Positions 17,222 through 56,600 of a stretch of DNA of 64,000 nt are shown here, piece after piece. The stretch covers positions 2,418,001 through 2,482,000 of the forward strand of contig JAKIMF020000001.1 of the NCBI GenBank assembly GCA_022605425.2. Direction: 5' to 3'. How positions within the stretch are numbered: position 1 is the first letter of the stretch; the number at the start of each line of letters is the position of its first letter. The translations under genes and the position numbers were made by a program. This stretch comes from Hamiltosporidium tvaerminnensis FI-OER-3-3 (lineage: Eukaryota > Fungi > Microsporidia). The notes beneath the pieces were generated by a model that ran no database searches, had not been told where the DNA came from, and saw nothing but the letters and a program-made list of their open reading frames with translations.

Positions 17222-17350
17222 TAATTTAACACCCCTTTATTTATACACTTAAATTGTATTTTAACACCCCGATAATCATTATACAATTCAACATACATTT
17301 AACACCCCGTTAATCATTATACCATTCAACTCAATTTTAACACCCCTTTA
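17222..17350 (+). repeat. Four TTTAACACCCC motifs at ~35-40 bp spacing upstream of the 1586-aa gene
   Basis: tttaacacccc near 17225, 17260, 17298 and 17336. Confidence 0.85.
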
Positions 17351-17422: not shown

Positions 17423-20400
17423 ATGATTCTAATATTACCAACAATACTAATAAACCTAATATCATCCAATATAATACAGATAGTACCATATTGTGACCAA
17501 AAGTGTAAGAACACACTTCTTCTTTCCAAATACATTGCTGAACACATGAACGGACCAATCAATTCTAATTCTTCATTACCATTTATTTTATCATACGATC
17601 ATAACACATCACTAACACATTTAAATTTAACACCTAACGAACACACTACTGGTAATAACAGTAAAATACTTACAAATACAACAGGGTCTTATAATACTAG
17701 TAAAGATATTAAAGGGTCTTATACTCAGTATAACACAGGTAACACTACTAAAGGGTCTTATAATACTAGTAATAGTACTAAAGGGTCTTATACTCCTTAT
17801 AGTAGTACTAAAGGGTCTTATACTCCCTCTAATGCTACTAAAGGGTCTTATACTCCTTATAGTAGTACTAAAGGGTCTTATACTCCTTATAATAGTACTA
17901 AAGGGTCTTATACTCTTTATAGTAGTACTAAAGGGTCTTATACTCCCTCTAATGCTACTAAAGGGTCTTATACTCCATATAATAGTACTAAAGGGTCTTA
18001 TACTCCTTATAGCACTACTAACAGTACAACAGCTTATACACCCTATAATACTGTTAATACCTCTAACAGTACAACAGGGTCTTATTATATACCCTATTCA
18101 TCTAAAAACAAAGAATCTTCAAAAATACCAAAAATAAATTCTTCTGGTGTTAACAACACATTACCAATAATTTCTAACGAACTTTCGTTTAAAATAAAAC
18201 CCTTTAATGATAAAGAAAAAAAGTATATAATTAAAGGGTCTAAATATATTTTTGATAAGAATAACACAAATAATAATAATTCTCCTCATTTAAAGACCTT
18301 ACAGTCTCAACTTACTAATTTCTTGAGTCGTTCTGATATACCGTACTATTCTAGTGAAATAAAGGTACTTTCTAATAAGATTGATACGTTGTATAATATT
18401 GTTTCTAAGTTGAGTGAGATTAAGAAGATTGATGATAAAGCAAGTAGTTTAATGAAAATAGGAAGTGTAAAGGGTGTTAGTGACATAGTTAATGTAAAGG
18501 GTGTTAATATAAAGAATACTAAACAACAGGGTGTTAATAACAGTATAGATAAACAACAGGGTGTTAATAACAGTACAAATAAACAACAGGGTGTTAGTAA
18601 CAGTATAGATAAACAAAAGGGTGCTAACATAAGTACTGGTAAACAACAGGGTGTTAGTATTAAAATTAATACAAAGGGTGTTAATACAAATACTATAAAT
18701 AACACCCCTTTACCTTTATATACACCCTTTAAGTACGGTAATCTATATTTTCTACCTTTTCAAGCCTATAACACCCCTTTAGAGTACAACAGTGTTATTA
18801 ACAAGAACATTGACTTAAATTATACTCAACCCTTTAATTACCCACATAACAGTAATTCTGATTACAATCCATATATTAACACCCCTCCTTATAATAACCC
18901 ATATTTTACTTACGACTATAACACCCATTACAATACCATATCCTCTTGGTATACTAACACCCATTATAACACAGTAAGACCTTCATATAATAACACTATA
19001 CCCCCTTCATATACTAACACCCTTTATAACACTATACCTCCTTCCTATAATAACACCCCTTATAACACTATACCATCTTCATATACTAACACCCCTTATA
19101 ACACTATACCATCTTTCTATAATAACACACCTTATAACACTATACCTTCTTCATATACTAACACCCCTTATAACACTATACCATCTTCCTATACTAACAC
19201 CTCTTATAACACTATACCTCCTTCATATACTAACACCCCTTATAACACTATACCTCCTTCATATACTAACACCCCTTATAACACTATACCTCCTTCATAT
19301 ACTAACACCTCTTATTATTATAGCTCTTATTCAAAACCTAATACTACAATAACACCTTATAACACCTCACTAATATCACCTAAAACCACAATAAAAACAA
19401 TAACAAAAATTAAAAAGATAAACCATACATTAACAGTAGATCATCCTATAACAATAACAGTAACAAATTCTATAGTTAAACCTATATCTGCCACCATTTT
19501 ATCTGATAGTTCTAATTCTGAAGATACTACTAGTGATAGTAATATTATATCACCTGTTATATCTTCTACTATATCACCTGTTATATCTATAGATAGGTTT
19601 AATACTTATAATGAAGATACTGTAAGTAACAGTGTTAGTTATAGTAAAGAGATAAATACTGTTTATAATACAACTGATAGTAGAAACCCTAACCCTAACC
19701 TAACCCTAGATACACGCATAAACAAAAGTATAAATACTGTAAATAACACCCATGTACACCCTAACCCTAACCTAACCCTAAACACACGCATAAATAAAAG
19801 TATAAATACTGTAAATAACACTACTACCTATAGTAATAAGCCTTATTTAAAAGGTAAAAAGAAAATAAAACGTATTTATAAGAAGAAAATACCAAATACC
19901 TTTAACACACTGATTAACACTGTTATAAACACTAACACTACATACACTAACACTACATACACTAACACTACATACACTAACACTAGTGTTCTAAGTACTA
20001 CTGCTATAGTTACTACATATACTAACACTAGTGTTCCAAGTACTACACATACTAACACTAGTGTTCCAAGTACTTCATATACTAACACTAGTGTTCCAAG
20101 TACTACATATACTAACACTAGTGTTCCAAGTACTACATATACTATCACTACTGTCACTTTCAATAATTTACCTATAAATACCTTTAAAGGTATAATTAGT
20201 AGTATTGGTGTTAATAAGCCTTCTTATAAGCCATTAGATAGTAACAATAGCGTTAGTATAAATAAGAGTATAACATATGATAATATAAAGGGTGTTAGTG
20301 TAGATGAAGGGGAAGGGGGTGTTAATAATATGGGTAGTAAGTTAGAGGGTGTTAATAATAGGAGTATTAAAGAGGGTGTTAATATAATGAGTAGTAAAGA

Positions 20401-39690: not shown

Positions 39691-40102
39691 AATTAAAAAA
39701 TTATTTTTCGAACCATAATTTTTTTTTCACTTTTTATACTTTTTATTTCCTTATTTTTTTTCTCCCCATACTTCACCCAAACAAAATCATACAAAATACC
39801 ATAAATAAAAATCATCTTTTCTTACTGATGTAATCTACCGGTTAAAAAGTTAAGATAAATTAAAATTTATTTTAAAATAGATGAACACACTAAACAAATT
39901 AGCCATGGGGATAAACCTAAAATATGACATTTAATCACATTACAAGAAAAAAAAACAACCAAAAGCATCTTTCCTAATAAAATATATAAAAAATTCTAAA
40001 AAATACATTTTTTTATTCAAATTTAAATTAATATTTAAAATTTTAATTTATTTTATTTCTAAACTCAAAAAAATATTATCAATCTCATATAATCTTCGTA
40101 TT

Positions 40103-40560
40103 TCTTATAATCTCTTCTTATAATCTCTTCTTATAATCTCTTCTTATAATCTCTTCTTATAATCTCTTCTTATAATCTCTTCTTACTTAATCTCCCATCA
40201 TTATACATCTCTATAATACATATATCTATACATATCCCTATATCTATACATCCATATAATATCCCTCTCTATACATATATCTCTATCTCTATACATTCAT
40301 ATAATACATATCTCTATCTCTATACATCCCTATGATATATCTCTATCTCTATACATTCATATAATATCCCTCTCTATACATATAATACATATCTCTATAC
40401 ATCCATATAATATATCTCTATCTCTATACATTCATATAATATATCTCTATCTCTATCCCTCTCTATACATATATCTCTATCTCTATACATCCCATAATAT
40501 ATCTCTTTAGATCCCTATAATATATCTCTATCTCTATGTATATCTCTAACCTCCATATAT
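40103..40560 (+). repeat. 13-bp tandem repeat (TTATAATCTCTTC, ~6 copies) followed by a degenerate CTCTATA/CATATA minisatellite, upstream of midasin
   Basis: Directly visible. The tract is almost G-free on the plus strand. Confidence 0.9.
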
Positions 40561-40590
40561 TTATATTTATAACAAACCCCATCAATCTAA

Positions 40591-43500
40591 ATGGAAATAA
40601 ATTCACAAAATAAAAGATTAAAACAAACAAACCAAACTCTCCTACAAAAAGCACTTCACTACAAAATACCAATAAACATATACGGCACACATCCACACAC
40701 ACTTATATCACCACACTTCTTTACAATAGATCTACGACAATACACAGATCTTTCTACACTTATTTATACTGTTCATCTTACATCTACACATCTGCAATAT
40801 ACAGAAGGATTGTTAACTACTGCTTGTAAATATGGATATGTTACTGTTATTACACATACAGATACTAACCCTTCTATATTTGATTATTTAAAACCACTAT
40901 TCAATGGATTATTAAACATTAGCAATGAAAAATTTGAAAATGAAATACAAGATGGCTTATATAACGAGAATAACGGGTATAACGGTAACGGTTTAAAAGA
41001 GAATAACGGGTATAACGGTAACGGTTTAAAAGAGAATAACGGGTATAACAGTAACGGTTTAAAAGAGAATAACGGGTATAACGGTAACGGTTTAAAAGAG
41101 AATAACGGGTATAACAGTAACGGTTTAAAAGAGTCTGATAATAACACCTCTTGTGGGAATAGTACTTATAATAACAACTCCTATGGTAATAGTACTAATG
41201 ATAACACCTCTTGTGGGAATAGTACTTATAATAACACCTCCTATGGTAATAGTACTTATAATACCACCCCTTTAAATAACAATAATACTATTAACACCCC
41301 TTTAACCGACAATAATAGTATTAACACACCTTTAACCAAGAATAATACCATTAACACACCTTTAACCAACAATAATACTATTAACACACCTTTAACCAAC
41401 AATAATACTATTAACACCCCTTTAACCAACAATAATACTATTAACACCCCTTTAAATAACAATAATACCATTAACACCCTATCCTCTATATTATCACCCT
41501 TTTATAATCCACACCCAAACTTTAGAATAATATTTACTTCTTCTACAAAACTACAGTCGAATAACACTGTACATATAGGACCTGTTACTTATACTTTACC
41601 ACTCACACCTCTTATTTCCTTACTAAATACTTTTTATCCTTTTAATAAACCACCTACCTTACAAGATACATACTTTATAACACGTCTTACTAATAGATTA
41701 CAGTCATTATCCCTTTATACTGCCATACAACAGACATATATAATAACACTTAAGACACTTAAAGAACAGAAAGAAGTAGAAGAGAAGATAAAGGGTTTTA
41801 ATATAGAAGAGATAGATAATAACACCCCTTTAGTTGAGTGTACTTATAATAACACCCCTTTAAATAACCGTACTTACGATAACACCCCATATTCCAGTAC
41901 CTTTATCACTAACACCCCTTTAAATAACAACTCCATAAATAACACCCCTTTAAATAACAAGTATATCAATAACACCCCATTATCCACTACCATTATAAAT
42001 AACACCCCCTCCTTTGCCCCTACTTCCCAGTCCCTCGTAACACTGTCTGCTTTATCTTCTTGTATTCTCTATAACGAACCCGTACTTCTTATAGGAGAAA
42101 CAGGTGTTGGTAAGACACATCTAATACAACACTTATCAAATATAAATAATAAATATCTTTATATTTATAACATGTCTAGTGATACTGATGTATCTGATTT
42201 ATTGGGGTTTTATACTTCTGTACATCCTATAAGTGTTATTGAAGAGTATGTTGGTAATATTATTAAAAGAGAAATTAATGAGACACCTCTGTGTTACTTA
42301 GAAAGGATAGAAAGGTATATAAATGATAATAGGGAGACTGAGGGTGTTAATGATAGTAGTAAGGAAGAGGGTGTTAATGATAGTAGTAAGGAAGAGGGTG
42401 TTAATGATAGTAATTATAAGGGTGTTAATGATAGTAGTAGTAATTATAAGGGTGTTAATGATAGTAGTACTAATTATAAGGGTGTTAGTAACAGTACCAA
42501 TAACTATCACCCCTTTAATAACAGTACCAATAACTATCACCCCTTTAATAACAGTACTAATAATTATAACCCCCTTAATAACAGTACCAATAATCATAAC
42601 CCCCTTAATAACAGTACTAATAATTATAACCCTCTTATTCCTTATATAAATATACCTTTATTATTAAATTCTATTAAAGAATGTAAAATCCTTATAAATA
42701 AAGGTATACCTCATTTTAAATATCAACAGGGTGTTATGTATAAAGCAATGACAGAAGGTAAATGGTTATTGTTAGATGAAGTTAACCTTTCACCAAAAGA
42801 GACCCTTTTATTTATAGACAGTATAGTAGAAAGGATAGTTAAGAGTAATTATGAGGGTAGTGGTAATAACACCCCTTTAAGTAACAGTGGTATAAATAAC
42901 ACCTATAACTATAGTATTAATAACACATATAACACCCCTTTAAACAACAGTACTAGTAATCCTTCTTATAACACCCCCTCTAACCGACATACTACCCTTT
43001 ACAATATACATTATAACCCCTTGTTATACAACATACATCCTAACTTTAGACTCTTCTGTTGTATGAACCCTCCTGGTATAGGAAAGAAGGATTATAAAGG
43101 TATTTTATTTTCTAAAATATTTATGTTAGATTTTACAGATTCTATAACAGATATTAACATATTAACACATTACTTGTTAAGAGAAAGGAATAGTAAAATA
43201 ACACCCTTAAGGAATAGTAAGTTAACACCCTCAATGGATAGTAAGTTAACACCCTTAAGGAATAGTTGTTTAACACCCTTTTATAAAGCACAAGAAATCA
43301 ATAGTGAATTAACACCCTTTTATAAAGGAGAAGAAAACAATAGTAAGTTAACACCCTCAATTGATAGTAAGTTAACAGCCTTAAGGAATAGTTGTTTAAC
43401 ACCCTTTTATAAAGGAGAAGAAAACAATAGTGAATTAACACCCTTTTATAAAGGAGAAGAAAACAATAGTAAGTTAACACCCTCAATTGATAGTAAGTTA

Positions 43501-46500
43501 ACACCCTTAAGACATAGTAAGTTAACACCCTTTTATAAAGGAGAAGAAGGCAATAGTAATTTAACACCCTCAGTAGATAGTAATTTAACACCCCCTTCTT
43601 TATCTTGTCTAACACCCCTTGATTCTTTACCTTTATTTTTCTTTAAATTAAAAGAAAATGTATTAAATAAAGAATTAAAAGGTTTTTATAATAAACCACT
43701 TATAACAGGTAGAACATATTGTAGATTAATTAATATGATAAATAAAGGGTGTTGTATATATGATAGTATAAGACTTGTTATTTATACACAATTTAATAGA
43801 GAAGGTGTTAATTATATAGATAGTATGGTAAAGGGTTATAATTTATACTGTGAGTGTAGATTAGAGGGTGTTATTGATAAGAATGATGATTATAAGGGTG
43901 TTAATGATAAGGATATGTTGGAGGGTGTTAGTGATAAGAATGATGATTATAAGGGTGTTAGTTATAAGAATGATGATTATAAGGGTGTTATGGATAAGGA
44001 TAGTAATATAAAGGGTGTTAACATTAATACTAATACTTATCACCCTCTTAATAACATTAATACTTATCCCCCTCTTAATAACACTAAATCTTCTCACCCT
44101 CTTAATAACACCTTCTCCCTTACTTCATCTAATACCCGTTATATAGAAATACTACAATTATCTATAAAATATAACCTACCTATTCTTTTACAAGGACCTA
44201 CTTGTACAGGTAAAACAGCTTTAATTACTTACATTTCTAAGATAAATAACACCCCTTTAATACGTATAAATAATCATAACAATATAACACGTGCTGATTA
44301 TATAGGAACATATCAACTAATAAATAACACCTGTACCTTTATTTATGGACCTTTATTACACTGTATGTTAAAGGGGTGTTATTTATTATTAGATGAATTA
44401 AATTTAGCACCAAGTGAAGTATTAGAAGTACTTAATAGGGTGTTAGATTGTAATAGAGAGATATATGTTGATGAGATACAACAGACTGTTAAGTGTAGTA
44501 AAGGGTTTAGAGTGTTTTGTACACAGAATGTTATGTATGGAGGTAGAAAGGGTCTTAGTGAAGCATTACGTAATAGATTTGTAGAGGTTACTGTTGAACA
44601 GTTAACACTGGAAGATATAAAGAGTATAGTAAGGGGTAGTATAAAGGGTAGGGAGGGAGTAGGGGGTGTTAATGATAGTAGTAGTAATTATAAGGGTGTT
44701 AAGGATAAGCATAGTAATTATAAGGTTGTTAATAAGAATAGTAGTGATTATAAGGGTGTTAATGATAGTAATAGTAATTATAAGGGTGTTAATGATAGTA
44801 GTAATTATAAGGGTGTTAATGATAGTAATTGTAATTATAAGGGTGTTGGTGATAGTAGTAGTAATTATCACCCTCTTAACAAGTGTAGTAATTATCACCC
44901 TCTTAACAAGTGTAGTAATTATCACCCTATTAGTAACACTACTGATACTTTACACCCTCTTAACAATAACAATACTATACAACACCCCCTTTCTACACGT
45001 ATTATAAATAAGATACTTTCTGTTTATGATAGTCTAAGATTATATAGAAATTTTAATAGTCTTATAAGTATAAGAGATATATTAAGATGGGTAAGAAGGA
45101 AGGGTGTTAGTGAAGAAGAAGTATATGAAAATGGTGTTATGTTGTTATTTGAAAGACAAAGGAATTATATGGATAGGTGTGTTGTTAAAGGGGTGTTAGA
45201 TGATGTGTTTAGAGGGGTAGTAAGAAGTAGGGGTGTTAGTAACAGTACTAGTAATTATCACCCTGTTAGTAACAGTAGTAATAATTATCACCCTCTTAAT
45301 ATCAATACTAATTCTCATCACCCCTTTAGTAACAGTACTAATACTTATCCCCCTGTTAACAACAGTAGTAATACTTTACACCCTCTTAACAACAGTATTA
45401 ATAATTATCACCCTGTTAGTAACAGTACTAATACTCATCACCCCTTTAGTAACAGTACTAATACTTATCACCCTGTTAACAACAGTAGTAATAATTATCA
45501 CCCTGTTAATAACACCAATAATAATTATCACCCCTTTAACAACAGTAGTAATACTTCCTTTGTATTAACACCCTCTTATTTACGTATGTATACGTTAATA
45601 TATACAGCTTGGATTAACAAGGAACCTATACTTCTTATAGGAGAAACAGGTATTGGTAAAACAAAGATGTTAGAATATGTTAGTAATCTTATGGGTGTTA
45701 ATATAGAGACATTCTCATGTAATAGTAATACACAGACACATGACTTTATAGGGTATTACACGTTAGGTAAAGGAAGTAATGAGGGGGGTGTTAATGATAG
45801 TAGTAGGGTAGAGGGTGTTAGTAATAGTAGTATGTTAGAGGGTGTTAATCATGAGGAGTATGAATTAGAGGGTGTTAGTAATAGTAGTATGTTAGAGGGT
45901 GTTAGTAATAAGGACTATGGATTAGAGGGTGTTAATGTTAAGGACTTTGGATTAGAGGGTGTTAATGTTAAGGGTAGTAATTATAAAGGTGTTAATGTTA
46001 AGGAGTATAGATTAGAGGGTGTTAATGTTAAGAGTCCTAAACAACAGGGTCTTAGTAACAGTACTAATACTTTACACCCCTTTAGTAAGATAGATCGTAA
46101 ACAACAGGGTCTTAGTAACAGTACTAATACTTTACACCCCTTTAGTAACATAGATTCTAAACAACAGGGTCTTAGTAACAGTACTAATAATTTACACCCC
46201 TTTAGTAAGATAGATCGTAAACAACAGGGTCTTAGTAACAGTACTAATAATTTACACCCTCTTAACAACAGTACAAATAATTATAACCCTGTTAGTAACA
46301 GTACTAATACTTTACACCCTCTTAACAACAATACTAATAACAATAACACTAACACCCTCTTCAAATACGGTCCCCTTGTTACTGCTATGAGAACAGGTAA
46401 AGCCTTTTTATTTGATGAAATAAACTTAACAGATGATTCTGTCTTAGAACGTATAAATTCTTTATTAGATGACTCTAACACTCTTTATATACCAGAGACT

Positions 46501-49500
46501 AATGAAACTATATATCCTAATAATAATTTCATATTATTAGCTACTATGAATCCTGGTACAGATATTGGTAAGAAAGAATTAAGTCCTGCTTTACGTAGTA
46601 GATTTAATGAAATATATTTTGATATTCCTAATAATGAAATAGAGGGTGTTATGATGGATAGAGTAGGTTATAGTGTAAAGGGTGTTAGTATGAGGAAGGT
46701 AGAGATAGTGAGTGAGTTTTATAATGTAGTGAGTGTTAGGGATATGTTAAAGGGTGATAGTAGGGTGGGTGTTAGTGACAGTAATGGGGGTGTTAGTGAT
46801 AAGGATAGTAAATTAGAGGGTGTTAGTAATAAGGATAGTAAATTAGAGGGTGTTAATAATAAGGATAGTAAATTAGAGGGTGTTAGTAATACTACTAATA
46901 CTTATCACCCTGTTAGTAATACTACTAATACTTATCACCTTGTTAATACTAATACTAATACTTATCACCCTGTTAATACCCCTTTACAGCAATACTTTAA
47001 TACCCTTCTTCTTAATCTTAAAGGTACTATTACTATTTATAATACTAACACCTTTTATTCTATTAAAGAAGAATCTTTAGAATTAATAGGTTTTAAAAGT
47101 AATAAAAAACCTATTTTATATGAAAATAACAGGGTATTTGGTGTTTTACCTTTTCTTATAGAAAAGTATGAGAAAGAGGGGTGTTATGATATGTTAGAAG
47201 GTAAAGATAACAGTAGTAATAATAACACCCCTTTAAACAACTGTACTAGTAATAACACCCCTTTAAATAACTGTACTAGTAATACCTATAATAACACCCT
47301 CTTAAACAATAGTACTGATGATAACACCCTTTTAAACAACAGTATTAGTAATAACACCCTCTTAAACAACAGTATTAGTAATAACACCCTCTTAAACAAT
47401 AGTACTGATGATAACACCCTCTTAAACAACAGTACTGATGATAACACCCTATTAAACAACAGTATTAGTAATAACACTTATTTCTCCTTTGATAACTTAA
47501 CTACCCTTTATAATCTACGTAGAATACTAAAGGGTATGTTTATAAGAAAACCTATATTATTAAAAGGTATACCTGGTGTAGGTAAGACAGATATTTTAAA
47601 AAATATTTCATATAAATTAAAAATACCATTTATGCGCATAAACATGTCAGAACAAACAGAAGTAGAAGAACTATTTGGTACATACGTATTAACAGACAAA
47701 AAGTTAAAATATAAATTATCTTCTCTTTCAATCTCTTTAAATAACAAATTACCTTCAATAATACTTTTAGATGAAATAAATTTAACACCTAGTAGTGTAA
47801 TAGAAGGTGTTAATTCTTTATTAGATTATCGTAGAGAAATAAGTGTTGAAGGTTTTAAAATATGTAATTATAATAGTTTTATATTTTGTAGTTGTAATTA
47901 TGAAGGAGAAGGAAGAAAAAGTATGCCTCGTAGTTTTATTGATAGGTTTGTTGTTATTGATATGGAGAGTTATACAGAAGAAGATATAAGTAAGATAATG
48001 GGGTGTTATAATACTAGTGATATAAATTATAGTAGAGGGTATAATGAGGGTGTTAATGACAGTAGTAGTGTGGGTGTTAATGACAGTAGTAGTGTGGGTG
48101 TTAATGACAGTAGTAGTAATAGGTGTGTGGATAACACCCTATTAAATAACAGTACTTTCAATAACACCCTCTTACCTAGTACCAATATAAATAACACCCT
48201 CTTACCTACTACACCATCTAATAACACCCTCTTACCTACTACACCTTCTAATAACACCCTCTTACCTACTACACCATCTAATAACACCCTCTTACCTACT
48301 ACACCATCTAATAACACCCTCTTACCTACTACCAATAATAACACCTTCTTACCTACTACTAATATAAATAACACCCTATTACCTACTACCAATATAAATA
48401 ACACCCCTATCACACCTTCTAATAATAACACCCCTCCCTTTAATATTATGTCTCTTCGTACCCTTTATAACCTATCCTTACGTGACTGTCTTAAGATAAA
48501 ACTACTTAACCATAATTATTTCTCTATAAATAACCCTAAATACTTTATAAGAAATAACACCCTTTATATAGGTAGTGCAATATTACCTTTAAATTTATAT
48601 ACTAACACCTATACTTTATTACATAACCAGTTAAATTCTTTAGAAACTATAATACATTGTTATAATAGAAGAATACCTGTTATTTTACTAGGATGTAGTA
48701 GATATAGTGTTATACGTTTTATTTCTTATGTTAGTAAACATAAGGTTAGTTATATTTATTGTTATAAAGGGACAGATACTAATGACTTATTAGGGACATA
48801 TGGGTTTAGTAAATTAGAGGGTGACAATCATAGTGATTATATGGGTGTTAATGAGAGTATTGGTAAAGTAGAGGGTGATAATGAAAAGGATAGTGATTAT
48901 AAGGGTGATAATGAAAAGGATATTTATTATAAGGGTGTTAATAAAAGTACCAGTAATTATCACCCTGTTAGTAACACTACTGATAAACAACACCCCTTTA
49001 ATAACACTACTGATAAACAACACCCCTTTAATAAAAGTATCAGTAATTATCACCCTGTTAGTAACACTACTCATAAACAACACCCCTTTGGTGACACTAC
49101 TCATAAACAACACCCCTTTAATAACACTACTAATAAACAACACCCCTTTAATAACAATCCTAACTCTACTTCCTTTACCTGGTCTGATTCTTCTCTGGTT
49201 ACTTCTATTATAAATGGTAATATTACAGTAATTAATAGGGTAGATTTAGTAGATAAAGGTATATTTGATAGATTATGTTCTTTATTTGAATTTAATAGGT
49301 CTTTATATATAACAGAAAGAGGTTTCATTAATATAAATAAAGATACTTGGTTAGTAAGTATCGTAGATGATTTAAAGGGTGTTAGTACAGCTATGAAGGA
49401 TAGATGTGTTATTGTAGAGTTAAAGGGTGTTACTGACTGTATAGATGTATGGAAGATGCATAGTAGTGTTAAGAGTAGTAATAAGGGTGGTGATAGAGGG

Positions 49501-52500
49501 TATGTAAGAGATAAAGGGGTCTTAAATATTAGTGATAGGAATAACACCCCTTTGGATATAGATAGTAATAAGAATAACACCCCTTTGGATATAGATAGTA
49601 ATGATAACACCCCATTGGATATAGATAGTAATAAGAATAACACCCCTTTAATCAACTATAGTAGTAGTCACTTTTATAACACCCCTTTAACAACACACTG
49701 TATAGATAACACCCCCTTACCTCTTACACTTCCTCTCTATGATGTTCCTTTTCCTCATATATTAGACTTATTAAGTAATAATACTTCTTATATTAACACC
49801 CCTTTATGGTTTAATAATACTTTAATAGAAGAAGAAATTAAAGGGTATTCATTTCCTTATAAAGTAAAAGGTTTTAATTATAATAATATAGGTAATATAC
49901 CTTTATTAACAGTAGAATTATATAAAATACTTTATTATATACCAATAGGTGTTAATGATATAGAAAAGTTAGATATACTAATTAATAACAGGGGTAGTGA
50001 TAATGATATGTTGGGTAGTGATATGTTGGATAGTGGATTAGAGGGTGTTAATAATAAGAATATGATTGAGGGTGTTAGTAACAATACTAGTAATTATCAC
50101 CCCTTTAGTAACGGTACTAGTAAACAACAGGGTGTTAATAACAGTATAGATGATTATCACCCCTTTAGTAACAGTAATAGTAAACAACAGGGTGTTAATA
50201 ACACTATAGATGATTATCACCCCTTTAGTAATAACCTCTATACTCATAACCCTGTTAATGATATTACCTTGTTTAAAAGAAGTGTTATATTCCTTAGTAA
50301 TAGTGTTTTAAGCGTATGTAAGGGTTATAGTGTTATAGAATTAAAAATAAATTTTATTAAGAAGTTTATAGGGTGTAGTGTTAAAGAATATAAGAAATTA
50401 AAAGATATTTATAATAAATTAAAGGGTGTAGAGAATTTTAAGATGTATAAGTGTAGTAGTGTAGATATAATAGGGGGTGATATAGGTAGAGATATTCTAG
50501 GGGGTGTTAATAACAGTACTAATGAACAACAGGGTGTTAATAACAGTGGCAATACTTATCACCCTGTCAATGATAGTACTAATACTTATCACCCCTTTAG
50601 CAACAGTAACAATACACAACACCCCTTTAACAAGAATACTAATACTCAACACCCCTTTAACAACACACCATATACTCAACACCCCTTTAACAACAATACT
50701 AATACTTATCACCCCTTTAACAACAGTACTAATACTTATCACCCCTTTAATCACACACCTACTCTCCTTCATACAACTAACACCATTCCTTCTTGTCTTA
50801 CCTTTATTATTAATATTATACTTACTTATAATATAGACCCTTTAAATATCATAAGAAATAACCTTATAAACAAGTATAATGATATGATAAATAAATATAA
50901 GAATATTCTTTATAATGAATTTATAAAAGGTTATAAATATGGAGAAAGTAATGAATATACATTTTATTGTAAAGAATTTATTGTTATTTATAAGGAGTAT
51001 ATTAAGAGGATAGAAGATATTGAAAATAAAATAGAGAGTAGGAATATAAAGGGTGTTATAGAAGAGTATAAGAGAGTAAGGGGTGTTAGTGATAAGGATA
51101 AGTATAGGGGTGTTAGTGATAAGGATAGGGGTGTTAGTGATAAGTATAGGGGTGTTAGTGCAGGTACTTATAATTATAACCCTGTTAATAATCTTTCTAA
51201 TAAACAACAGGGTGTTACTGATACTACTAATAATTATAACCCTGTTAACTCATATACGTGTAAGCAACAGGGTGTTTATAATCTTTCTATAAAACAACAG
51301 GGTGTTAATAATACTACTATGAATTATAACCCTGTTAATCTAAATACTAGTAAACAACAGGGTGTTAATAATACTACTATGAATTATAACCCTGTTAATC
51401 TAAATACTAGCAAACAACAGGGTGTTAGTAATCTTTTCAATAAACAACAGGGTGTTACTGATACTACTAATAATTATAACCCTGTTAATCTAAATACTAG
51501 TAAACAACAGGGTGTTAATAATAGTACTATGAATTATAACCCTGTTAATAACTTTAATATTATTGACTTTTCTGATTGGTTAGATTCTTATTATACGGGT
51601 CTTTTTAATGATATTGTATTGTTAGGTATGTTATTTAAGAAAGAGGTGTTAATAGAAGTAAATGATATTCATAGACTGTTAGACTATTGTTATATAAGTA
51701 GTAAGGTAAAGGGTGTTAGTGATAAGGATATGGATAGAGGTGTTAGTGATATGGATAAGGGTCTTAATGTTACTACTGATGTACAACAGGGTGTTAACAA
51801 CTGTACCAATGAACAACACTCTTTAGATATAAGTACCACTAAACAACACCCCTTTAATAATACTAATATTGATATTAAGAGTCTTATTGATACTCTTATA
51901 TTTAACACCCCTTATTCTTATACTACTAATGTTATTTCTAAAGCAATATATTTATTATATTATAACAGGGGTGTTAATATAGAAGAAATAGTATTAGAAT
52001 GTATAAAGGGTGATAAATATATAGAAGTATGTGATAAAGGGTGTAATAGGTATAGTAAGGGTAGGTGTGTGGATAACACCCCTTTAAGTAATAGTAATAT
52101 CTATAATAATAACACTGGTACTACTGGTACTGAGAATAACACTAGTATTAGTAATAATAACACCCCTTTCAGTAATAGTAATATCTATAATAATAACACT
52201 GGTACTACTGGTACTGAGAATAACACTAGTATTAGTAATAATAACACCCCTTTCAGTAATAGTACCATTATACCTTATATATGCTGTTCTAGTCTTACTG
52301 ATATGTACTTTACTTATATAGATAGTCTAATGTTATTTGTATATAAAAATATAAATAATAAAGCTTTACTGTTAGATAAGTGTTATGGTGATAGTGTTAG
52401 TGACTGTAGTGTTAATATAAGTGAAATAGAAATAAGAAATATAATAAGAAATAAAGGGGGTGTTAATTACAAGGATATATTGGAGGGTGTTAATGATAAG

Positions 52501-55500
52501 GATATATTGGAGGGTGTTAATTATAAGGATTTGATAGAGAGTATTAAGAGTGTTAATGATATGGATATATTGGAGGGTGTTAAGGGTGTTAATTATAAGG
52601 ATATATTGGAGGGTGTTAATACCAGTACTTATAAACAAGACCCCTTTAATAACCGAACTCATAAACAAGACCCCTTTAATAACATTACTGATAAACAACA
52701 CCCTGTTAATGACACTCCATATAATTATCACCCTCTTAATAACAGTACTACTCAACACCCTCATAATAACACCCTTCCTTTCTTTAACCTTTTATCTCTT
52801 TGTTTAGATTTAAATGTAAAAAGAAAATATAAAGAATTTGTATGGTTAGTTTATAAGAAATATTCAATACAAGAATTAGAAGGATGGTTAATAAGAGGAA
52901 GTATAGGAGATTTTATAGATAGATTGTTATTTATAGAAGAATTAGTTATTAATTATAAAGGTAGTAGTGTTATTTATAATATTTCATTACAATATTTATC
53001 TTTTAATGTTGTTGAAGAGGTTATTAGAAGGATTAAGAAGGGAGAGAAGGGAATAGAAGTGTTAAAGGGTGTTATTTATAAGGGAATGGTAAAGGGTTAT
53101 CGGGATAGTAAATTAGAGGGTGTTAGTTATATGGATAGTAAATCAGAGGGTGTTAGTTATATGGATAGTAAATCAGAGGGTGTTAGTTATATGGATAGTA
53201 AATCAGAGGGTGTTAGTTATAAGGATAGTAATTATAAGGGTGTTAGTAATAAGGATAGTAATTATAAGGCGTTTAGTAATAAGGATAGTAATTATAAGGG
53301 ATTTAATAACAGTATAGATATAGAAGAGGGTGTTAATAATACACCATATATTCAACACCCTGTTAGTAACAGTAGTAATAATTATCACCCCTTTAATAAT
53401 AACACTTATGAACAAGACCCTGTTTATAACAGTATAGATATAGAAGAGGGTGTTAATAACAGTACAGATAATTATCACCCTGTTAATAAAACTCCATATA
53501 ATTATCACCCTGTTAATGACAGTACTATACTTAACAGTACACTTAACACCCCCATTATTTCTATCCTTAAAATTGTTGATAATTTATTTACTTTTTATGA
53601 TAAACCTGTTATTTCTATGTTGAAGAGAAATAAAAGTAAAAATAAAATTACATGTGTATGTAAAGAGGGTGTTATCATTAATAAATGGGTAAAAGACTTA
53701 TTAAATACTTTAAGTATAAATAAAGGGGTATGTGATTGTTATAGATGGAAGGGTGTTATTAAGGGAATGAGTTGTAACAGTAAAAAGATAAAGGAAGTAC
53801 TTATAGAGGAATTAAAGGGTTATAGAATAGAGGGTGTTAATAACAGTATAGATAATTATCACCCTGTTAATAACAGTATAGATGATTATAAGGGTGTTAA
53901 TAACAGTACTAATACTTTACACCCTGTTAACAACAGTACTAATAATTATCACCCTCTTAATATTCCCTTTATATTTTATAATAGAAATATCCCTTTAAAT
54001 CCTTATAGTAAAGAAGAAAGGGTGTTAGGTTCTATAATTACATATTATACTGAAATAGAGGGTGTTAGTAACAAAGATATAATAGAGGGTGTTAGTAATA
54101 GTATAGATGTTTATAACCCTGTTAGCTATAACACTAATACTTTACACCCTGTTAACAATAAGAGTAATGAACAACAGGGTGTTAGTAATAACACTAATAC
54201 TTTACACCCTGTTAGTAACAGTACTAATACTTTACACCCTGTTAATAATAAGAGTAATGAACAACAGGGTGTTAGTAACAGTACTAATACTTTACACCCT
54301 GCTAATAATAAGAGTAATGAACAACAGGGTGTTAGCTATAACACCAATACTTTACACCCTGTTAGTAACAGTACTAATACTTTACACCCTGTTAATAATA
54401 TACTTATTTATTCTTCCTTAATAAATAACACCTATCTTCCTTACCTGTTATTTGTATTGGAATATTTATGGATTGTTAATAATGAATGTGAAATAACAGA
54501 TTGTAATGAGGAATATGTAAAAGGTATTGATAGAAGTAAAGGGGGTGTTAATGAAGAGGGTAGTGAAGACTCTGTTAGTGAGGAAGATGAAGAGGGTGTT
54601 AGTGATGAAGGTAGTGAAGAGGGCGTTAGTAACGGTACTAATAGTATAGATGAGGAAGAGGGTGTTGGTGATGAAGGTAGTGAAGAGGGTGTTAGTAACA
54701 GTACTAATAGTATACATGGGGAAGAGGGTGTTAGTGATAAAGGAGATGGTAAAGGAGAGGAAGAGGGTGTTAATGATAAAGGAGATGCTAAAGGAGAGGA
54801 AGAGGGTGTTAGTGATAGTAATTGTGAAGAATATGATGAAGAGGGTGTTAGTGATAGTACTTATGATGAAGAGGGTGTTAGTGATAGTACCATTATACAA
54901 GAGGGTGTTAGTAACACATCTAATGACGAAGGTGTTAATGAAGAAGGTGTTAGTAACATTTTACAAGAGGGTGTTAGTGACTGTAGTCTTATAGACTATG
55001 AAGTAGGTGTTAATGAGAGTAATAATGAACAGACAGCATTAACAGGTGATAATTATACTACTATTGTAGAAGAGGGTGTTAATAATACTGAATTACCATT
55101 AACAGGTGATAATTCATTAGAGTTACAACAGGGTGTTAATGAACAGTTAGATATAGAAGAAGAACCATTAACAGGTGATAATTGTAATATGGAGGGGGGT
55201 GTTAATCAACAGACAGAGACCACAGATACCTTAGACCTGTTAAGTAACACTATGCATAATAACACCCCTTTAAATAACAGTAATGATTCCCCACGTGAAA
55301 ACACCCCTTTAAACAACAGTAAGGATTCTCTATGTAATAACACCCCTTTAAATAACCATAAGGATTCTCCACGTAATAACACCCCTTTAACAAACGGTAA
55401 GGATTCTCCACGTAATAACACCCCTTTAACAAACGGTAAGGATTCTCTTGTTGATAACACCCCTTTAAACAACAGTAAGGATTCTCCACGTAATAACACC

Positions 55501-56328
55501 CCTTTAACAAACGGTAAGGATTCTATAAGTGATAACACCCCTTTAAATAACTGTAAGGATTCTATACATGATAACACCCCTTTAACCAACAATACTATTA
55601 ACAATACTAATAACACCCCTTTAACCAACAATACTAATATCACCCCTTTATTTTCTTCCCTTGATACTGATACTCTTATCTCTAGACTCTTATTAACCCT
55701 TAATGATACAGGTGGTATGCGTTATAATAATGGGTGTTATAGAAGTGGTAGAAAATTATCAATAAAAAAGGTTGTAGAGTATATAGCTAGTGGTTATAAA
55801 AGAGACAGAATATTTATGAGACGTAATAAGAAAGGAGGAGGTATTTGTAAGATATGTATATTTATAGATAACAGTAAAAGTATGAAAGATTATAAAGAAG
55901 TTGTTTTTAATTTATTAAATATATTAATTAATATAATTAATAATATAGGTTGTAATATAGAAATGTATAGATTTGGTAATGAAGTGATTAGTATAACTGG
56001 TAAGAGTGATATGACATTTACTGATACTGTAAGTGATATATGTATTGGAGATATGGGTGATATTATTGATGATTCTGTTGTTTTGGTGATTACTGATGGA
56101 ATATTTAGATGTGATGAGATTTATGAAAATGTGTTGTGTTTACTTATTGATAGGGTTGGGTTAAGGGATATGGATAGGGTTAGTGTAGTGGGTGATGAGG
56201 TTAAGGTTGTTAAGTTTCTTGATGAATTTAAAATGAAGTATTGTGTGGTGGGAGAGGATAATTTTGTTGAGGGGTTTGTTGAAGGGGTGAGAGAGATAGT
56301 AAGAGTAATGAGAGAGAGATGGGAGTAG
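40591..56328 (+). CDS. MDN1: Midasin (Rea1/MDN1) AAA+ ATPase, 60S ribosome maturation factor, inflated by about 25 in-frame repeat inserts
   Basis: Tandem AAA modules: GETGVGKT/LLLDEVNL, GPTCTGKT/LLLDELNLA, GETGIGKT/FLFDEINL and GIPGVGKT/ILLDEINL. Also HPNFRLF, ATMNPG, LSPALRSRF, a D/E-rich tether, and a C-terminal MIDAS (SGRKLSIKKVVEYIAS..IDNSKSM..ITDG). Confidence 0.95.
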   Translation: MEINSQNKRLKQTNQTLLQKALHYKIPINIYGTHPHTLISPHFFTIDLRQYTDLSTLIYTVHLTSTHLQYTEGLLTTACKYGYVTVITHTDTNPSIFDYLKPLFNGLLNISNEKFENEIQDGLYNENNGYNGNGLKENNGYNGNGLKENNGYNSNGLKENNGYNGNGLKENNGYNSNGLKESDNNTSCGNSTYNNNSYGNSTNDNTSCGNSTYNNTSYGNSTYNTTPLNNNNTINTPLTDNNSINTPLTKNNTINTPLTNNNTINTPLTNNNTINTPLTNNNTINTPLNNNNTINTLSSILSPFYNPHPNFRIIFTSSTKLQSNNTVHIGPVTYTLPLTPLISLLNTFYPFNKPPTLQDTYFITRLTNRLQSLSLYTAIQQTYIITLKTLKEQKEVEEKIKGFNIEEIDNNTPLVECTYNNTPLNNRTYDNTPYSSTFITNTPLNNNSINNTPLNNKYINNTPLSTTIINNTPSFAPTSQSLVTLSALSSCILYNEPVLLIGETGVGKTHLIQHLSNINNKYLYIYNMSSDTDVSDLLGFYTSVHPISVIEEYVGNIIKREINETPLCYLERIERYINDNRETEGVNDSSKEEGVNDSSKEEGVNDSNYKGVNDSSSNYKGVNDSSTNYKGVSNSTNNYHPFNNSTNNYHPFNNSTNNYNPLNNSTNNHNPLNNSTNNYNPLIPYINIPLLLNSIKECKILINKGIPHFKYQQGVMYKAMTEGKWLLLDEVNLSPKETLLFIDSIVERIVKSNYEGSGNNTPLSNSGINNTYNYSINNTYNTPLNNSTSNPSYNTPSNRHTTLYNIHYNPLLYNIHPNFRLFCCMNPPGIGKKDYKGILFSKIFMLDFTDSITDINILTHYLLRERNSKITPLRNSKLTPSMDSKLTPLRNSCLTPFYKAQEINSELTPFYKGEENNSKLTPSIDSKLTALRNSCLTPFYKGEENNSELTPFYKGEENNSKLTPSIDSKLTPLRHSKLTPFYKGEEGNSNLTPSVDSNLTPPSLSCLTPLDSLPLFFFKLKENVLNKELKGFYNKPLITGRTYCRLINMINKGCCIYDSIRLVIYTQFNREGVNYIDSMVKGYNLYCECRLEGVIDKNDDYKGVNDKDMLEGVSDKNDDYKGVSYKNDDYKGVMDKDSNIKGVNINTNTYHPLNNINTYPPLNNTKSSHPLNNTFSLTSSNTRYIEILQLSIKYNLPILLQGPTCTGKTALITYISKINNTPLIRINNHNNITRADYIGTYQLINNTCTFIYGPLLHCMLKGCYLLLDELNLAPSEVLEVLNRVLDCNREIYVDEIQQTVKCSKGFRVFCTQNVMYGGRKGLSEALRNRFVEVTVEQLTLEDIKSIVRGSIKGREGVGGVNDSSSNYKGVKDKHSNYKVVNKNSSDYKGVNDSNSNYKGVNDSSNYKGVNDSNCNYKGVGDSSSNYHPLNKCSNYHPLNKCSNYHPISNTTDTLHPLNNNNTIQHPLSTRIINKILSVYDSLRLYRNFNSLISIRDILRWVRRKGVSEEEVYENGVMLLFERQRNYMDRCVVKGVLDDVFRGVVRSRGVSNSTSNYHPVSNSSNNYHPLNINTNSHHPFSNSTNTYPPVNNSSNTLHPLNNSINNYHPVSNSTNTHHPFSNSTNTYHPVNNSSNNYHPVNNTNNNYHPFNNSSNTSFVLTPSYLRMYTLIYTAWINKEPILLIGETGIGKTKMLEYVSNLMGVNIETFSCNSNTQTHDFIGYYTLGKGSNEGGVNDSSRVEGVSNSSMLEGVNHEEYELEGVSNSSMLEGVSNKDYGLEGVNVKDFGLEGVNVKGSNYKGVNVKEYRLEGVNVKSPKQQGLSNSTNTLHPFSKIDRKQQGLSNSTNTLHPFSNIDSKQQGLSNSTNNLHPFSKIDRKQQGLSNSTNNLHPLNNSTNNYNPVSNSTNTLHPLNNNTNNNNTNTLFKYGPLVTAMRTGKAFLFDEINLTDDSVLERINSLLDDSNTLYIPETNETIYPNNNFILLATMNPGTDIGKKELSPALRSRFNEIYFDIPNNEIEGVMMDRVGYSVKGVSMRKVEIVSEFYNVVSVRDMLKGDSRVGVSDSNGGVSDKDSKLEGVSNKDSKLEGVNNKDSKLEGVSNTTNTYHPVSNTTNTYHLVNTNTNTYHPVNTPLQQYFNTLLLNLKGTITIYNTNTFYSIKEESLELIGFKSNKKPILYENNRVFGVLPFLIEKYEKEGCYDMLEGKDNSSNNNTPLNNCTSNNTPLNNCTSNTYNNTLLNNSTDDNTLLNNSISNNTLLNNSISNNTLLNNSTDDNTLLNNSTDDNTLLNNSISNNTYFSFDNLTTLYNLRRILKGMFIRKPILLKGIPGVGKTDILKNISYKLKIPFMRINMSEQTEVEELFGTYVLTDKKLKYKLSSLSISLNNKLPSIILLDEINLTPSSVIEGVNSLLDYRREISVEGFKICNYNSFIFCSCNYEGEGRKSMPRSFIDRFVVIDMESYTEEDISKIMGCYNTSDINYSRGYNEGVNDSSSVGVNDSSSVGVNDSSSNRCVDNTLLNNSTFNNTLLPSTNINNTLLPTTPSNNTLLPTTPSNNTLLPTTPSNNTLLPTTPSNNTLLPTTNNNTFLPTTNINNTLLPTTNINNTPITPSNNNTPPFNIMSLRTLYNLSLRDCLKIKLLNHNYFSINNPKYFIRNNTLYIGSAILPLNLYTNTYTLLHNQLNSLETIIHCYNRRIPVILLGCSRYSVIRFISYVSKHKVSYIYCYKGTDTNDLLGTYGFSKLEGDNHSDYMGVNESIGKVEGDNEKDSDYKGDNEKDIYYKGVNKSTSNYHPVSNTTDKQHPFNNTTDKQHPFNKSISNYHPVSNTTHKQHPFGDTTHKQHPFNNTTNKQHPFNNNPNSTSFTWSDSSLVTSIINGNITVINRVDLVDKGIFDRLCSLFEFNRSLYITERGFININKDTWLVSIVDDLKGVSTAMKDRCVIVELKGVTDCIDVWKMHSSVKSSNKGGDRGYVRDKGVLNISDRNNTPLDIDSNKNNTPLDIDSNDNTPLDIDSNKNNTPLINYSSSHFYNTPLTTHCIDNTPLPLTLPLYDVPFPHILDLLSNNTSYINTPLWFNNTLIEEEIKGYSFPYKVKGFNYNNIGNIPLLTVELYKILYYIPIGVNDIEKLDILINNRGSDNDMLGSDMLDSGLEGVNNKNMIEGVSNNTSNYHPFSNGTSKQQGVNNSIDDYHPFSNSNSKQQGVNNTIDDYHPFSNNLYTHNPVNDITLFKRSVIFLSNSVLSVCKGYSVIELKINFIKKFIGCSVKEYKKLKDIYNKLKGVENFKMYKCSSVDIIGGDIGRDILGGVNNSTNEQQGVNNSGNTYHPVNDSTNTYHPFSNSNNTQHPFNKNTNTQHPFNNTPYTQHPFNNNTNTYHPFNNSTNTYHPFNHTPTLLHTTNTIPSCLTFIINIILTYNIDPLNIIRNNLINKYNDMINKYKNILYNEFIKGYKYGESNEYTFYCKEFIVIYKEYIKRIEDIENKIESRNIKGVIEEYKRVRGVSDKDKYRGVSDKDRGVSDKYRGVSAGTYNYNPVNNLSNKQQGVTDTTNNYNPVNSYTCKQQGVYNLSIKQQGVNNTTMNYNPVNLNTSKQQGVNNTTMNYNPVNLNTSKQQGVSNLFNKQQGVTDTTNNYNPVNLNTSKQQGVNNSTMNYNPVNNFNIIDFSDWLDSYYTGLFNDIVLLGMLFKKEVLIEVNDIHRLLDYCYISSKVKGVSDKDMDRGVSDMDKGLNVTTDVQQGVNNCTNEQHSLDISTTKQHPFNNTNIDIKSLIDTLIFNTPYSYTTNVISKAIYLLYYNRGVNIEEIVLECIKGDKYIEVCDKGCNRYSKGRCVDNTPLSNSNIYNNNTGTTGTENNTSISNNNTPFSNSNIYNNNTGTTGTENNTSISNNNTPFSNSTIIPYICCSSLTDMYFTYIDSLMLFVYKNINNKALLLDKCYGDSVSDCSVNISEIEIRNIIRNKGGVNYKDILEGVNDKDILEGVNYKDLIESIKSVNDMDILEGVKGVNYKDILEGVNTSTYKQDPFNNRTHKQDPFNNITDKQHPVNDTPYNYHPLNNSTTQHPHNNTLPFFNLLSLCLDLNVKRKYKEFVWLVYKKYSIQELEGWLIRGSIGDFIDRLLFIEELVINYKGSSVIYNISLQYLSFNVVEEVIRRIKKGEKGIEVLKGVIYKGMVKGYRDSKLEGVSYMDSKSEGVSYMDSKSEGVSYMDSKSEGVSYKDSNYKGVSNKDSNYKAFSNKDSNYKGFNNSIDIEEGVNNTPYIQHPVSNSSNNYHPFNNNTYEQDPVYNSIDIEEGVNNSTDNYHPVNKTPYNYHPVNDSTILNSTLNTPIISILKIVDNLFTFYDKPVISMLKRNKSKNKITCVCKEGVIINKWVKDLLNTLSINKGVCDCYRWKGVIKGMSCNSKKIKEVLIEELKGYRIEGVNNSIDNYHPVNNSIDDYKGVNNSTNTLHPVNNSTNNYHPLNIPFIFYNRNIPLNPYSKEERVLGSIITYYTEIEGVSNKDIIEGVSNSIDVYNPVSYNTNTLHPVNNKSNEQQGVSNNTNTLHPVSNSTNTLHPVNNKSNEQQGVSNSTNTLHPANNKSNEQQGVSYNTNTLHPVSNSTNTLHPVNNILIYSSLINNTYLPYLLFVLEYLWIVNNECEITDCNEEYVKGIDRSKGGVNEEGSEDSVSEEDEEGVSDEGSEEGVSNGTNSIDEEEGVGDEGSEEGVSNSTNSIHGEEGVSDKGDGKGEEEGVNDKGDAKGEEEGVSDSNCEEYDEEGVSDSTYDEEGVSDSTIIQEGVSNTSNDEGVNEEGVSNILQEGVSDCSLIDYEVGVNESNNEQTALTGDNYTTIVEEGVNNTELPLTGDNSLELQQGVNEQLDIEEEPLTGDNCNMEGGVNQQTETTDTLDLLSNTMHNNTPLNNSNDSPRENTPLNNSKDSLCNNTPLNNHKDSPRNNTPLTNGKDSPRNNTPLTNGKDSLVDNTPLNNSKDSPRNNTPLTNGKDSISDNTPLNNCKDSIHDNTPLTNNTINNTNNTPLTNNTNITPLFSSLDTDTLISRLLLTLNDTGGMRYNNGCYRSGRKLSIKKVVEYIASGYKRDRIFMRRNKKGGGICKICIFIDNSKSMKDYKEVVFNLLNILINIINNIGCNIEMYRFGNEVISITGKSDMTFTDTVSDICIGDMGDIIDDSVVLVITDGIFRCDEIYENVLCLLIDRVGLRDMDRVSVVGDEVKVVKFLDEFKMKYCVVGEDNFVEGFVEGVREIVRVMRERWE

Positions 56329-56339
56329 TAGATGGGATG

Positions 56340-56600
56340 GTAATGATAGGTGTGGGTTATGGTATTAAGATATATTTCTGGATATTAATTTTACTTATTA
56401 TTTTAAAGGTTTTATTATGGTTTATTATAAGGGTTTTCTTATGTTTTTATTGTTTGTTTTAAGAGTCTATTTATGGGTTATTATAAAGATTACTTTAAGG
56501 TTATTATAAGGGTTATTTAAAAAGGTTACTTTATGGTTATTTATGGTTTATTTAAGATTCTATTATAGGTTTCCTATGGTTTTCTATGGTTTCTAATTTT
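56340..56600 (+). repeat. Degenerate GGTT(A/T)-rich low-complexity tract downstream of midasin
   Basis: Repeated ggttat/gggttat/ggtttt units. Confidence 0.7.

What the first reader, a model, noticed from the sequence alone, without database searches (positions are those of the whole stretch)
40591..56328. One DNA motif (GGGTGTTA/TAACACCC) underlies nearly all repeat inserts in midasin, on both strands and in several frames
Seen: the different-looking peptide repeats are the same nucleotide motif. GV[N/S] is GGT GTT A, GCY is GGG TGT TAT, NTP is AAC ACC CC, LTP (43190-43620) is TTA ACA CCC, and HP[V/F/L] is CAC CC. About 25 arrays with units of mostly ~21-36 nt (often 30) interrupt the gene roughly every 0.4-0.8 kb and never break the 15.7-kb frame. 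The same motif builds the repeats of the unrelated 1586-aa gene and non-coding arrays at 8760-9050 and 17222-17350. Inference: the selected or propagating unit is the DNA/RNA motif and not the peptide. That points to a genome-wide motif system (protein-binding site, recombination/repair hotspot, or templated addition) that inflates essential genes.
Basis: partly seen in the sequence, partly recalled or inferred. Interest (0 to 1): 0.92.

Follow-up and report, generated by a model that had tools for sequence, protein, structure and literature searches.

The report
Polar minisatellites bloating microsporidian essential genes
In a water-flea parasite (Hamiltosporidium), more than half of the ribosome-assembly gene midasin consists of fast-changing, in-frame DNA repeats. 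They share one 8-base core and sit on a G-then-C strand-bias wave, so the DNA rather than the protein appears to drive them, though what recognises or creates the core is unknown.

Summary
Confirmed with corrections. The genome is Hamiltosporidium tvaerminnensis. Midasin (40591-56328, 5,245 aa) carries 24 tandem arrays (9.3 of 15.7 kb). The octamer occurs 178 times in it (codon shuffle about 1) and 6,387 times genome-wide (reversed control 288), on both strands, in many conserved genes and in gene flanks with units that are not multiples of 3. Inserts are real: an independent assembly, a second isolate and H. magnivora keep the frame while unit numbers change. Corrections: 93% of plus-strand copies use one frame, GCY is 4 strays, and stop and hydrophobicity filtering picks the frames. 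Arrays are polar (G-strand copies first, C-strand second; 17/17 mixed arrays) and ride a roughly 600-nt GC-skew sawtooth that reaches third positions of conserved AAA codons (p=2e-10) and also shapes core-free repeats. Best reading: core-seeded coding minisatellites, expanded by slippage under weak selection at sites with a strand-asymmetric G/C substitution bias resembling fungal gene ends. A binding protein is plausible but untested; foldback/MITE is rejected. One paper mentions the inserts (MCM only); I found none on the motif. This scan found the same family before on other DNA. No RNA evidence was obtained.

The parts
40591..56328 (+). Midasin/Rea1/Mdn1 ORF, 5,245 aa, one open frame
   Evidence: Pfam AAA_5 x5; midasin hits; near-identical TBU05365.1 of 5,243 aa from an independent assembly; intact Walker A at aa 502, 1202, 1684, 2326
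40050..40590 (+). Core-free, C-only upstream tandem repeats (skew about -1), ending in a CCC-type element just before the ATG
40960..41480 (+). Array 1: core-free 33-nt repeat followed by C-type (NTP) units
   Evidence: 99-nt in-frame deletion in a second isolate
41806..43041 (+). Arrays 2-4 (41806-42027 C-only; 42327-42654 G then C; 42853-43041 C-only); arrays 3 and 4 split one AAA domain between and after its Walker motifs
   Evidence: copy-number differences in H. magnivora and a second isolate
43185..43639 (+). Array 5: LTP-frame C-type units (24/39/126-nt periods), 14 cores
43851..47003 (+). Arrays 6-10, each G-strand units (GV) then C-strand units (HP)
   Evidence: indels across four other assemblies net multiples of 3
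47164..50766 (+). Arrays 11-16, G then C; array 16 shares an exact 46-nt stretch with the HDAC gene on contig C2
51034..54411 (+). Arrays 17-22 in the linker region (G-only, G then C, or alternating GV/HP)
54528..55757 (+). Arrays 23-24: acidic G-type units, then NTP units, before the C-terminal domain
56330..56600 (+). Core-free, G-skewed downstream flank (skew +0.5 to +0.9)
17423..22183 (+). 1,586-aa ORF without Pfam match, with the same GV and NTP units (39 cores) and the same skew wave
19685..19800 (+). Short canonical telomere-repeat tracts with a constant 3' tail inside the 1,586-aa ORF; 60 such composites genome-wide vs 1 control
8760..9050 (+). Non-coding C-type array (28-30-nt units) directly upstream of the small-GTPase-like ORF at 9084, grading into a CCC element
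17222..17350 (+). Non-coding C-type array (35-38-nt units) upstream of the 1,586-aa ORF

Best explanation
These are core-seeded, strand-polarised coding minisatellites. Step 1 (shown): housekeeping-gene islands carry an extreme strand bias, C-rich on the sense strand at gene starts and G-rich at gene ends; inside long genes the same C-to-G ramp repeats, resetting at every insert. Step 2 (shown): the octamer lies in the orientation of the local skew, once per repeat unit. Step 3 (inferred): closely spaced cores act as short direct repeats, or as a bound-protein pause site, that template slippage and unequal exchange, so each new unit carries one core. Step 4 (shown): arrays gain and lose units between isolates. 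Step 5 (shown filter, inferred cause): in coding DNA only stop-free, hydrophilic, frame-keeping units in tolerant loops persist, probably because selection is weak. Step 6 (inferred): the inserts behave like internal gene ends, where a strand-asymmetric process exchanges G and C on either side of the centre; this turns GV units into HP units in register and biases neighbouring conserved codons. The core is most likely the site of a sequence-specific DNA-binding factor related in use to the microsporidian CCC promoter element (inferred, untested).
For: Enrichment and both strands. G-before-C order in 41/45 mixed clusters and 17/17 in midasin. C-type upstream and G-type downstream of genes. Third positions of 911 profile-aligned AAA residues: C67:G19 after an array vs C12:G41 before the next, p=2e-10; identical residues p=5e-4. 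No such wave in three fungal midasins or in the TE-rich part of the window. Gene-end skew amplitude tracks motif load, rho 0.76. Isolated cores agree with local skew 11/11. G and C swap at nearly constant A, T and G+C. Indels confined to arrays and frame-keeping; array substitutions mostly non-synonymous, flank ones mostly synonymous. The five other frames hold 144-945 stops, three of them also hydrophobic. Gene-end skew is known in fungi (PMC3315797); CCC element in microsporidia (PMC2803860; PMC11592040); low Ne argued for this genus (PMC6944219).
Against: No binding, break-mapping or RNA data. The full octamer is not ATG-proximal in most sampled genes; shorter ACCC forms are. Selection on the core was not demonstrated. 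Coding units of unlinked genes share up to 46 nt exactly, more than two null models give, so some transfer between loci may add to local slippage. The loci compared were chosen for having the motif, which inflates the correlations. Whether skew or motif came first is not resolved.
Confidence: 0.5

Rival explanations
1. Break-and-repair hotspots: array centres are recurrent double-strand-break or fork-collapse sites. Resection leaves the top strand single-stranded on the left and the bottom strand on the right; cytosine damage with translesion repair gives G-left/C-right, and repair slippage expands the repeats, as with human core minisatellites at recombination hotspots.
For: The polarity matches 3'-overhang geometry and is opposite to what divergent transcription or a replication origin would give (inference). 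G/C exchange at constant G+C. One Y-family polymerase and a weak Spo11-like hit are present, no Ku was found.
Against: A break site every 600 nt in an essential gene is hard to sustain. The same polarity at ordinary gene ends is known without breaks. Too few SNPs to polarise. Not exclusive of the best explanation.
Confidence: 0.2
2. Mutation-only attractor: a regional mutation bias (loss of GC and CG dinucleotides and of A-runs, strand skew) makes the octamer the commonest GGG word, with no factor recognising it.
For: Non-array parts of array genes are also depleted of GC (rho 0.41 vs 0.86) and CG (0.35 vs 0.78) and enriched in core fragments. Core-free polar repeats exist. Core conservation is weak.
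Against: One 8-13-nt core per unit across unrelated unit lengths and flanks, and 22-fold excess over the reversed word, are too specific for composition alone.
Confidence: 0.12
3. Telomerase-templated healing: telomerase adds G-rich DNA to both ends of internal breaks, which rejoin head to head, and the repeats then drift and expand.
For: Polarity equals a telomere-fusion junction. The octamer resembles the telomere repeat with two extra bases. Short canonical telomere tracts with a constant tail occur in the same genes, 60 vs 1 control. TERT is present.
Against: Telomeres are pure TTAGGG and essentially lack the octamer. Cores are about 30 nt apart, not head to tail. The G-to-C switch is made of direct units in register. 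The tail is not the subtelomere junction. The telomere-like tracts read as hydrophilic Asn-Pro and could be convergent.
Confidence: 0.06
4. A mobile or copied unit (MITE, foldback element, Rickettsia-type palindromic element, or ectopic gene conversion) spreads among genes.
For: Exact sense-to-sense matches of 29-46 nt with HDAC, PRP8, a helicase and the 1,586-aa gene; 1,559 bases covered vs 300 +/- 61 in a core-fixed shuffle. Coding units resemble other genes' coding units (8-13% vs 0.6% null).
Against: Arms are not inverted copies (longest 10-16 nt; 51 direct vs 2 inverted matches between arrays). RNA helices are 15 bp or less. No fixed element length or ends. Non-coding units match nothing else (0-1%). 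No Rfam or phage match. Like-with-like conversion between coding arrays stays possible.
Confidence: 0.08
5. The peptide is what matters, or the inserts are removed as introns or inteins (inteins were raised for MCM in PMC6944219).
For: Frame and hydrophilicity are preserved; the inserts split conserved domains.
Against: Synonymous positions follow the core. The same core occurs in non-coding DNA. Residues in arrays change freely. No intein family among the Pfam hits for aa 1-4600. Strict frame-keeping argues for translation. Confirmed introns average 28 nt (PMC10542269).
Confidence: 0.04

Closest known systems
Coding minisatellites and megasatellites of Saccharomyces and Candida glabrata (PMC2566889)
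   Same: In-frame tandem units in multiples of 3, strand skew, mixed units, related units in several genes
   Different: There mostly cell-wall and adhesin genes with C-skew only; here conserved enzymes, dozens of arrays per gene, one shared core, G-then-C polarity
Opposite GC skews at 5' and 3' gene ends in unicellular fungi (PMC3315797)
   Same: Sense strand C-rich at starts and G-rich at ends, reaching synonymous sites and flanks
   Different: Here amplitude near +/-0.8 to 1 and repeated about 24 times inside one ORF, resetting at each insert
Microsporidian CCC/ACCC promoter element (PMC2803860; PMC11592040)
   Same: ACCC core on the sense strand upstream of genes
   Different: Known element is single, within about 20 nt of the ATG and T-preceded; the octamer is multi-copy, tens to hundreds of bases upstream, reversed at 3' ends and inside CDS
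Asn-rich in-frame MCM expansions in Hamiltosporidium (PMC6944219)
   Same: Very probably the same phenomenon: in-frame inserts splitting conserved motifs
   Different: Reported for one gene family, at protein level, with no motif, polarity or skew
Human core minisatellites at PRDM9 hotspots (own knowledge)
   Same: Unrelated arrays share a short core; instability tied to a DNA motif
   Different: Those are GC-rich, non-coding and subtelomeric; no hotspot data exist here
Plasmodium Asn-rich low-complexity inserts; Rickettsia palindromic elements; interstitial telomeric repeats (own knowledge)
   Same: DNA-driven in-frame inserts in protein loops; telomere-like polarity
   Different: Plasmodium inserts have no shared core; RPEs are discrete palindromes; ITS are head-to-tail telomere repeats

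Membership tests
Coding minisatellite (VNTR) | Tandem units of about 10-100 nt | tested here: met
Coding minisatellite (VNTR) | Copy number varies between isolates, frame preserved | tested here: met
Coding minisatellite (VNTR) | Retained in mRNA and protein | tested here: inconclusive
MITE / foldback element | Long terminal inverted repeats | tested here: not met
   Longest inverted match within an array 10-16 nt
MITE / foldback element | Discrete ends, family-wide length, target-site duplication | tested here: inconclusive
   Arrays of 190-700 nt fade into flanks; no empty-site orthologue retrieved
Palindromic coding element (RPE-like) | Stable long hairpin with conserved full-length sequence | tested here: not met
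   Helices 7-15 bp, z +1.5 to -3.6; non-coding units unrelated beyond the core
Interstitial telomeric sequence | Head-to-tail copies of the organism's telomere repeat | tested here: not met
   Telomeres TTAGGG; cores about 30 nt apart. Met only for the separate short tracts
Microsporidian CCC promoter element | Sense-strand CCC motif within about 20 nt of the ATG | tested here: inconclusive
   Orientation matches; short ACCC forms lie near many ATGs but the full octamer usually does not
Microsporidian CCC promoter element | Marks transcription starts or binds a factor | not testable with these tools
   No TSS or binding data
Fungal gene-end GC skew | C bias at 5' and G bias at 3' ends including synonymous sites and flanks | tested here: met
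Intein / spliceosomal intron | Hint domain, or removal from mRNA at GT-AG ends | tested here: inconclusive
   No intein family among Pfam hits for aa 1-4600; frame conservation argues against removal; no RNA reads
Midasin/Rea1 | Tandem dynein-related AAA ring, linker, acidic tail, C-terminal MIDAS | tested here: met
   AAA ring by Pfam and homologues; tail read from the translation; MIDAS not scanned

The most novel reading that the evidence does not exclude
A sequence-specific factor binds the octamer and marks sites of strand-asymmetric DNA processing, so that every gene, and every conserved block inside long genes, is bracketed like a miniature chromosome. The marked sites mutate and expand themselves, inflating essential proteins and rewriting neighbouring codons: a self-reinforcing, motif-driven mutator not described elsewhere.
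Probability: 0.2. Interest if true: 0.85.

Novelty: new variant of a known kind. Interest (0 to 1): 0.6.

Why it matters
Microsporidia are the textbook case of protein shrinkage, yet here midasin, PRP8, dynein, Elp1 and IleRS are inflated by one repeat family. It gives a compact system for two open questions: how minisatellites with a shared core arise, and what causes the C-start/G-end skew of fungal genes. Here that skew recurs inside a single ORF, so it cannot be only an effect of real transcript ends unless the inserts act as cryptic ones. Population genomes and Iso-Seq data for this species exist, so the tests are within reach. Practically, these arrays break gene models (the current annotation gives 4,197 aa) and cause assembly frameshifts.

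Tried and rejected
Assembly artefact: rejected. Codon or amino-acid composition: rejected. Octamer as the telomere repeat: rejected. Telomere-tail composite as a copied subtelomere junction: not found at 14 contig starts with telomeres. Foldback, MITE or long hairpin: rejected. Internal poly(A) signals at arrays: depleted, about 1 vs 7 per kb, on both strands. Simple C-to-T deamination as the only cause: T barely rises in G-rich stretches. Purifying selection on the core: inconclusive. Polarising SNPs: 21 sites, too few. Other organisms: named hits with the repeat signature were Hamiltosporidium only; animal low-complexity proteins in that list (one mucin-like) were chance matches and not pursued. 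Rfam and phage DNA: nothing. ATG-linked pattern search: uninformative.

Full report
Source. The genome has 21,638,905 bases in 17 contigs and TTAGGG telomeres, matching the Hamiltosporidium tvaerminnensis assembly of PMC10542269. The protein's cluster holds H. tvaerminnensis and H. magnivora midasins. The window is contig C12:2,418,001-2,482,000.

Observation. The ORF 40591-56328 encodes 5,245 aa with five AAA_5 stretches. It holds 106 plus-strand and 72 minus-strand octamers; codon shuffling gives 0.5 each, and a synonymous shuffle with the protein fixed gives 20 and 4.4. Motif clustering defines 24 arrays covering 9.27 kb. Genome-wide there are 6,387 copies against 288 of the reversed word, evenly split between strands and clustered. 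The same units occur in PRP8, IleRS, a helicase, PI4-kinase, RPC82 and HDAC and in dynein and Elp1. An independent assembly gives an almost identical 5,243-aa protein, so this is no artefact.

DNA or peptide. The core is a DNA feature. Different amino acids precede GV, yet their codons end in G in 82 of 87 K/E/Q cases against 118 of 279 elsewhere in the arrays; His before Pro is CAC in 59 of 60 against 5 of 24. Non-coding arrays have units of 28-30, 38-40, 46 and 75-77 nt and share only positions -5 to +7. The protein still acts as a filter. The coding frame has no stops and GRAVY -1.0, the other five frames have 144-945 stops and three are hydrophobic. On the plus strand 99 of 106 copies sit in one frame; GCY is four strays. 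Across four other assemblies indels fall in arrays (apart from one pair at a contig edge) and net to multiples of three; substitutions are several-fold denser there and mostly non-synonymous, while flank changes are mostly synonymous. The arrays are therefore fast-turning VNTRs that are most likely translated.

Arrays are polar: G-strand copies precede C-strand copies in 17 of 17 mixed midasin arrays and 41 of 45 overall. Outside genes, C-type arrays lie upstream of start codons and G-type arrays downstream of stops. The switch is not an inverted duplication: units stay direct and in register, GGG is replaced in place by CCC with few intermediates, and inverted matches inside arrays are 10-16 nt. 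Under this lies a GC-skew sawtooth of about 600-700 nt, from about -1 after each switch to about +1 before the next. It is not only repeat debris. In 911 residues aligned to a fungal midasin profile, one linker at a time, third positions are C67:G19 after an array and C12:G41 before the next (p=2e-10; identical residues p=5e-4). Fungal midasins and the TE-rich part of the window show no wave. Core-free polar repeats flank midasin and other genes. Isolated cores follow local skew 11 of 11 times, and gene-end skew tracks motif load (rho 0.76, in a motif-chosen sample). G and C trade places at nearly constant A, T and G+C. Array genes also lack GC and CG dinucleotides outside their arrays.

Mechanism. 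Best supported (0.5): a short core, abundant and strand-oriented at housekeeping-gene ends, seeds slippage and unequal exchange; coding copies survive in tolerant loops under weak selection (argued for this genus in PMC6944219); and a strand-asymmetric substitution process centred on the same sites produces the polarity and leaks into neighbouring codons. Polarity, turnover, frame filter and codon skew are shown. Seeding by the core, a binding factor and the chemistry of the asymmetry are inferred. Break-and-repair (0.2) fits the geometry, since 3' overhangs would expose the top strand on the left and the bottom strand on the right, and is not exclusive; the genome has one Y-family polymerase, a weak Spo11-like hit and no detectable Ku. 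A pure mutation attractor (0.12) does not easily give one core per unit. Copying between loci (0.08) has some support, with exact 29-46-nt sense matches above two nulls, but only coding units resemble other coding units, which fits convergence or like-with-like conversion. Telomerase healing (0.06) rests on polarity and on 60 short telomere tracts with a constant tail, but the octamer is not the telomere repeat. Selection on the core itself was not demonstrated.

Comparison. It works like yeast coding minisatellites (PMC2566889) laid over an extreme form of the fungal gene-end skew (PMC3315797), with a core oriented like the microsporidian CCC promoter element. It passes the VNTR tests and fails those for foldback or palindromic elements and interstitial telomeres; membership of the CCC element is open. 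PMC6944219 mentions Asn-rich in-frame expansions in MCM only. In nine paper searches I found no description of the motif, the polarity or the intragenic sawtooth; the library lacks most subscription journals. Named proteins with the signature were all Hamiltosporidium, but only ten hits were looked up and no close outgroup was available.

Verdict. Real, genome-wide and DNA-driven; a new variant of known kinds, with mechanism open. This scan reported the same family on other DNA (s1-599485, s1-599502). What this work adds is the codon-level test in conserved AAA residues, the cross-species frame test and the coding versus non-coding sharing test. Limits: about 230 kb of motif-chosen loci rather than a random sample, no compact microsporidian orthologue, no reads. 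Interest 0.6.

Noticed in passing
L020 (G000:C1:853-862 kb) and L026: PRP8 carries the same arrays and shows frame breaks in this assembly; two of them (L020 about 3177 and 3870) are absent in an H. magnivora contig, so probably assembly errors in repeats. L025 and L033 show similar breaks.
   Followed up: partly
window 19685-19800; L020, L022, L025, L026: Two to three canonical telomere repeats followed by a constant short tail, in the C-strand sense inside unrelated genes; 60 genome-wide vs 1 control; not the subtelomere junction.
   Followed up: partly
window 40591-56328: Only four canonical Walker A motifs; the N-terminal domain and first AAA module barely align to fungal midasins. The public annotation gives 4,197 aa instead of 5,245.
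   Followed up: partly
array-bearing genes: Strong loss of GC and CG dinucleotides, alanine (1.2% vs 2.5%) and A-runs even outside arrays; genes without arrays are near neutral.
   Followed up: partly
L029 and L030 (C1:1.17 and 1.26 Mb): Two near-identical PI4-kinase genes in opposite orientation that differ in array length (1,809 vs 1,848 aa).
   Followed up: no
window 29161-30849: Tc1-like element (HTH and DDE_3) flanked by inverted arrays of 21/41-nt units.
   Followed up: no
window 3339-7097: Intact 1,253-aa non-LTR reverse transcriptase ORF, with one motif copy and no skew wave.
   Followed up: no
L019:3593-4048: Small acetyltransferase-like ORF lies just before the non-coding C-type array, so that array is downstream of one gene and upstream of another.
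   Followed up: no
L017 (start of contig C17): This contig end without telomere begins inside a loose C-type motif cluster.
   Followed up: no
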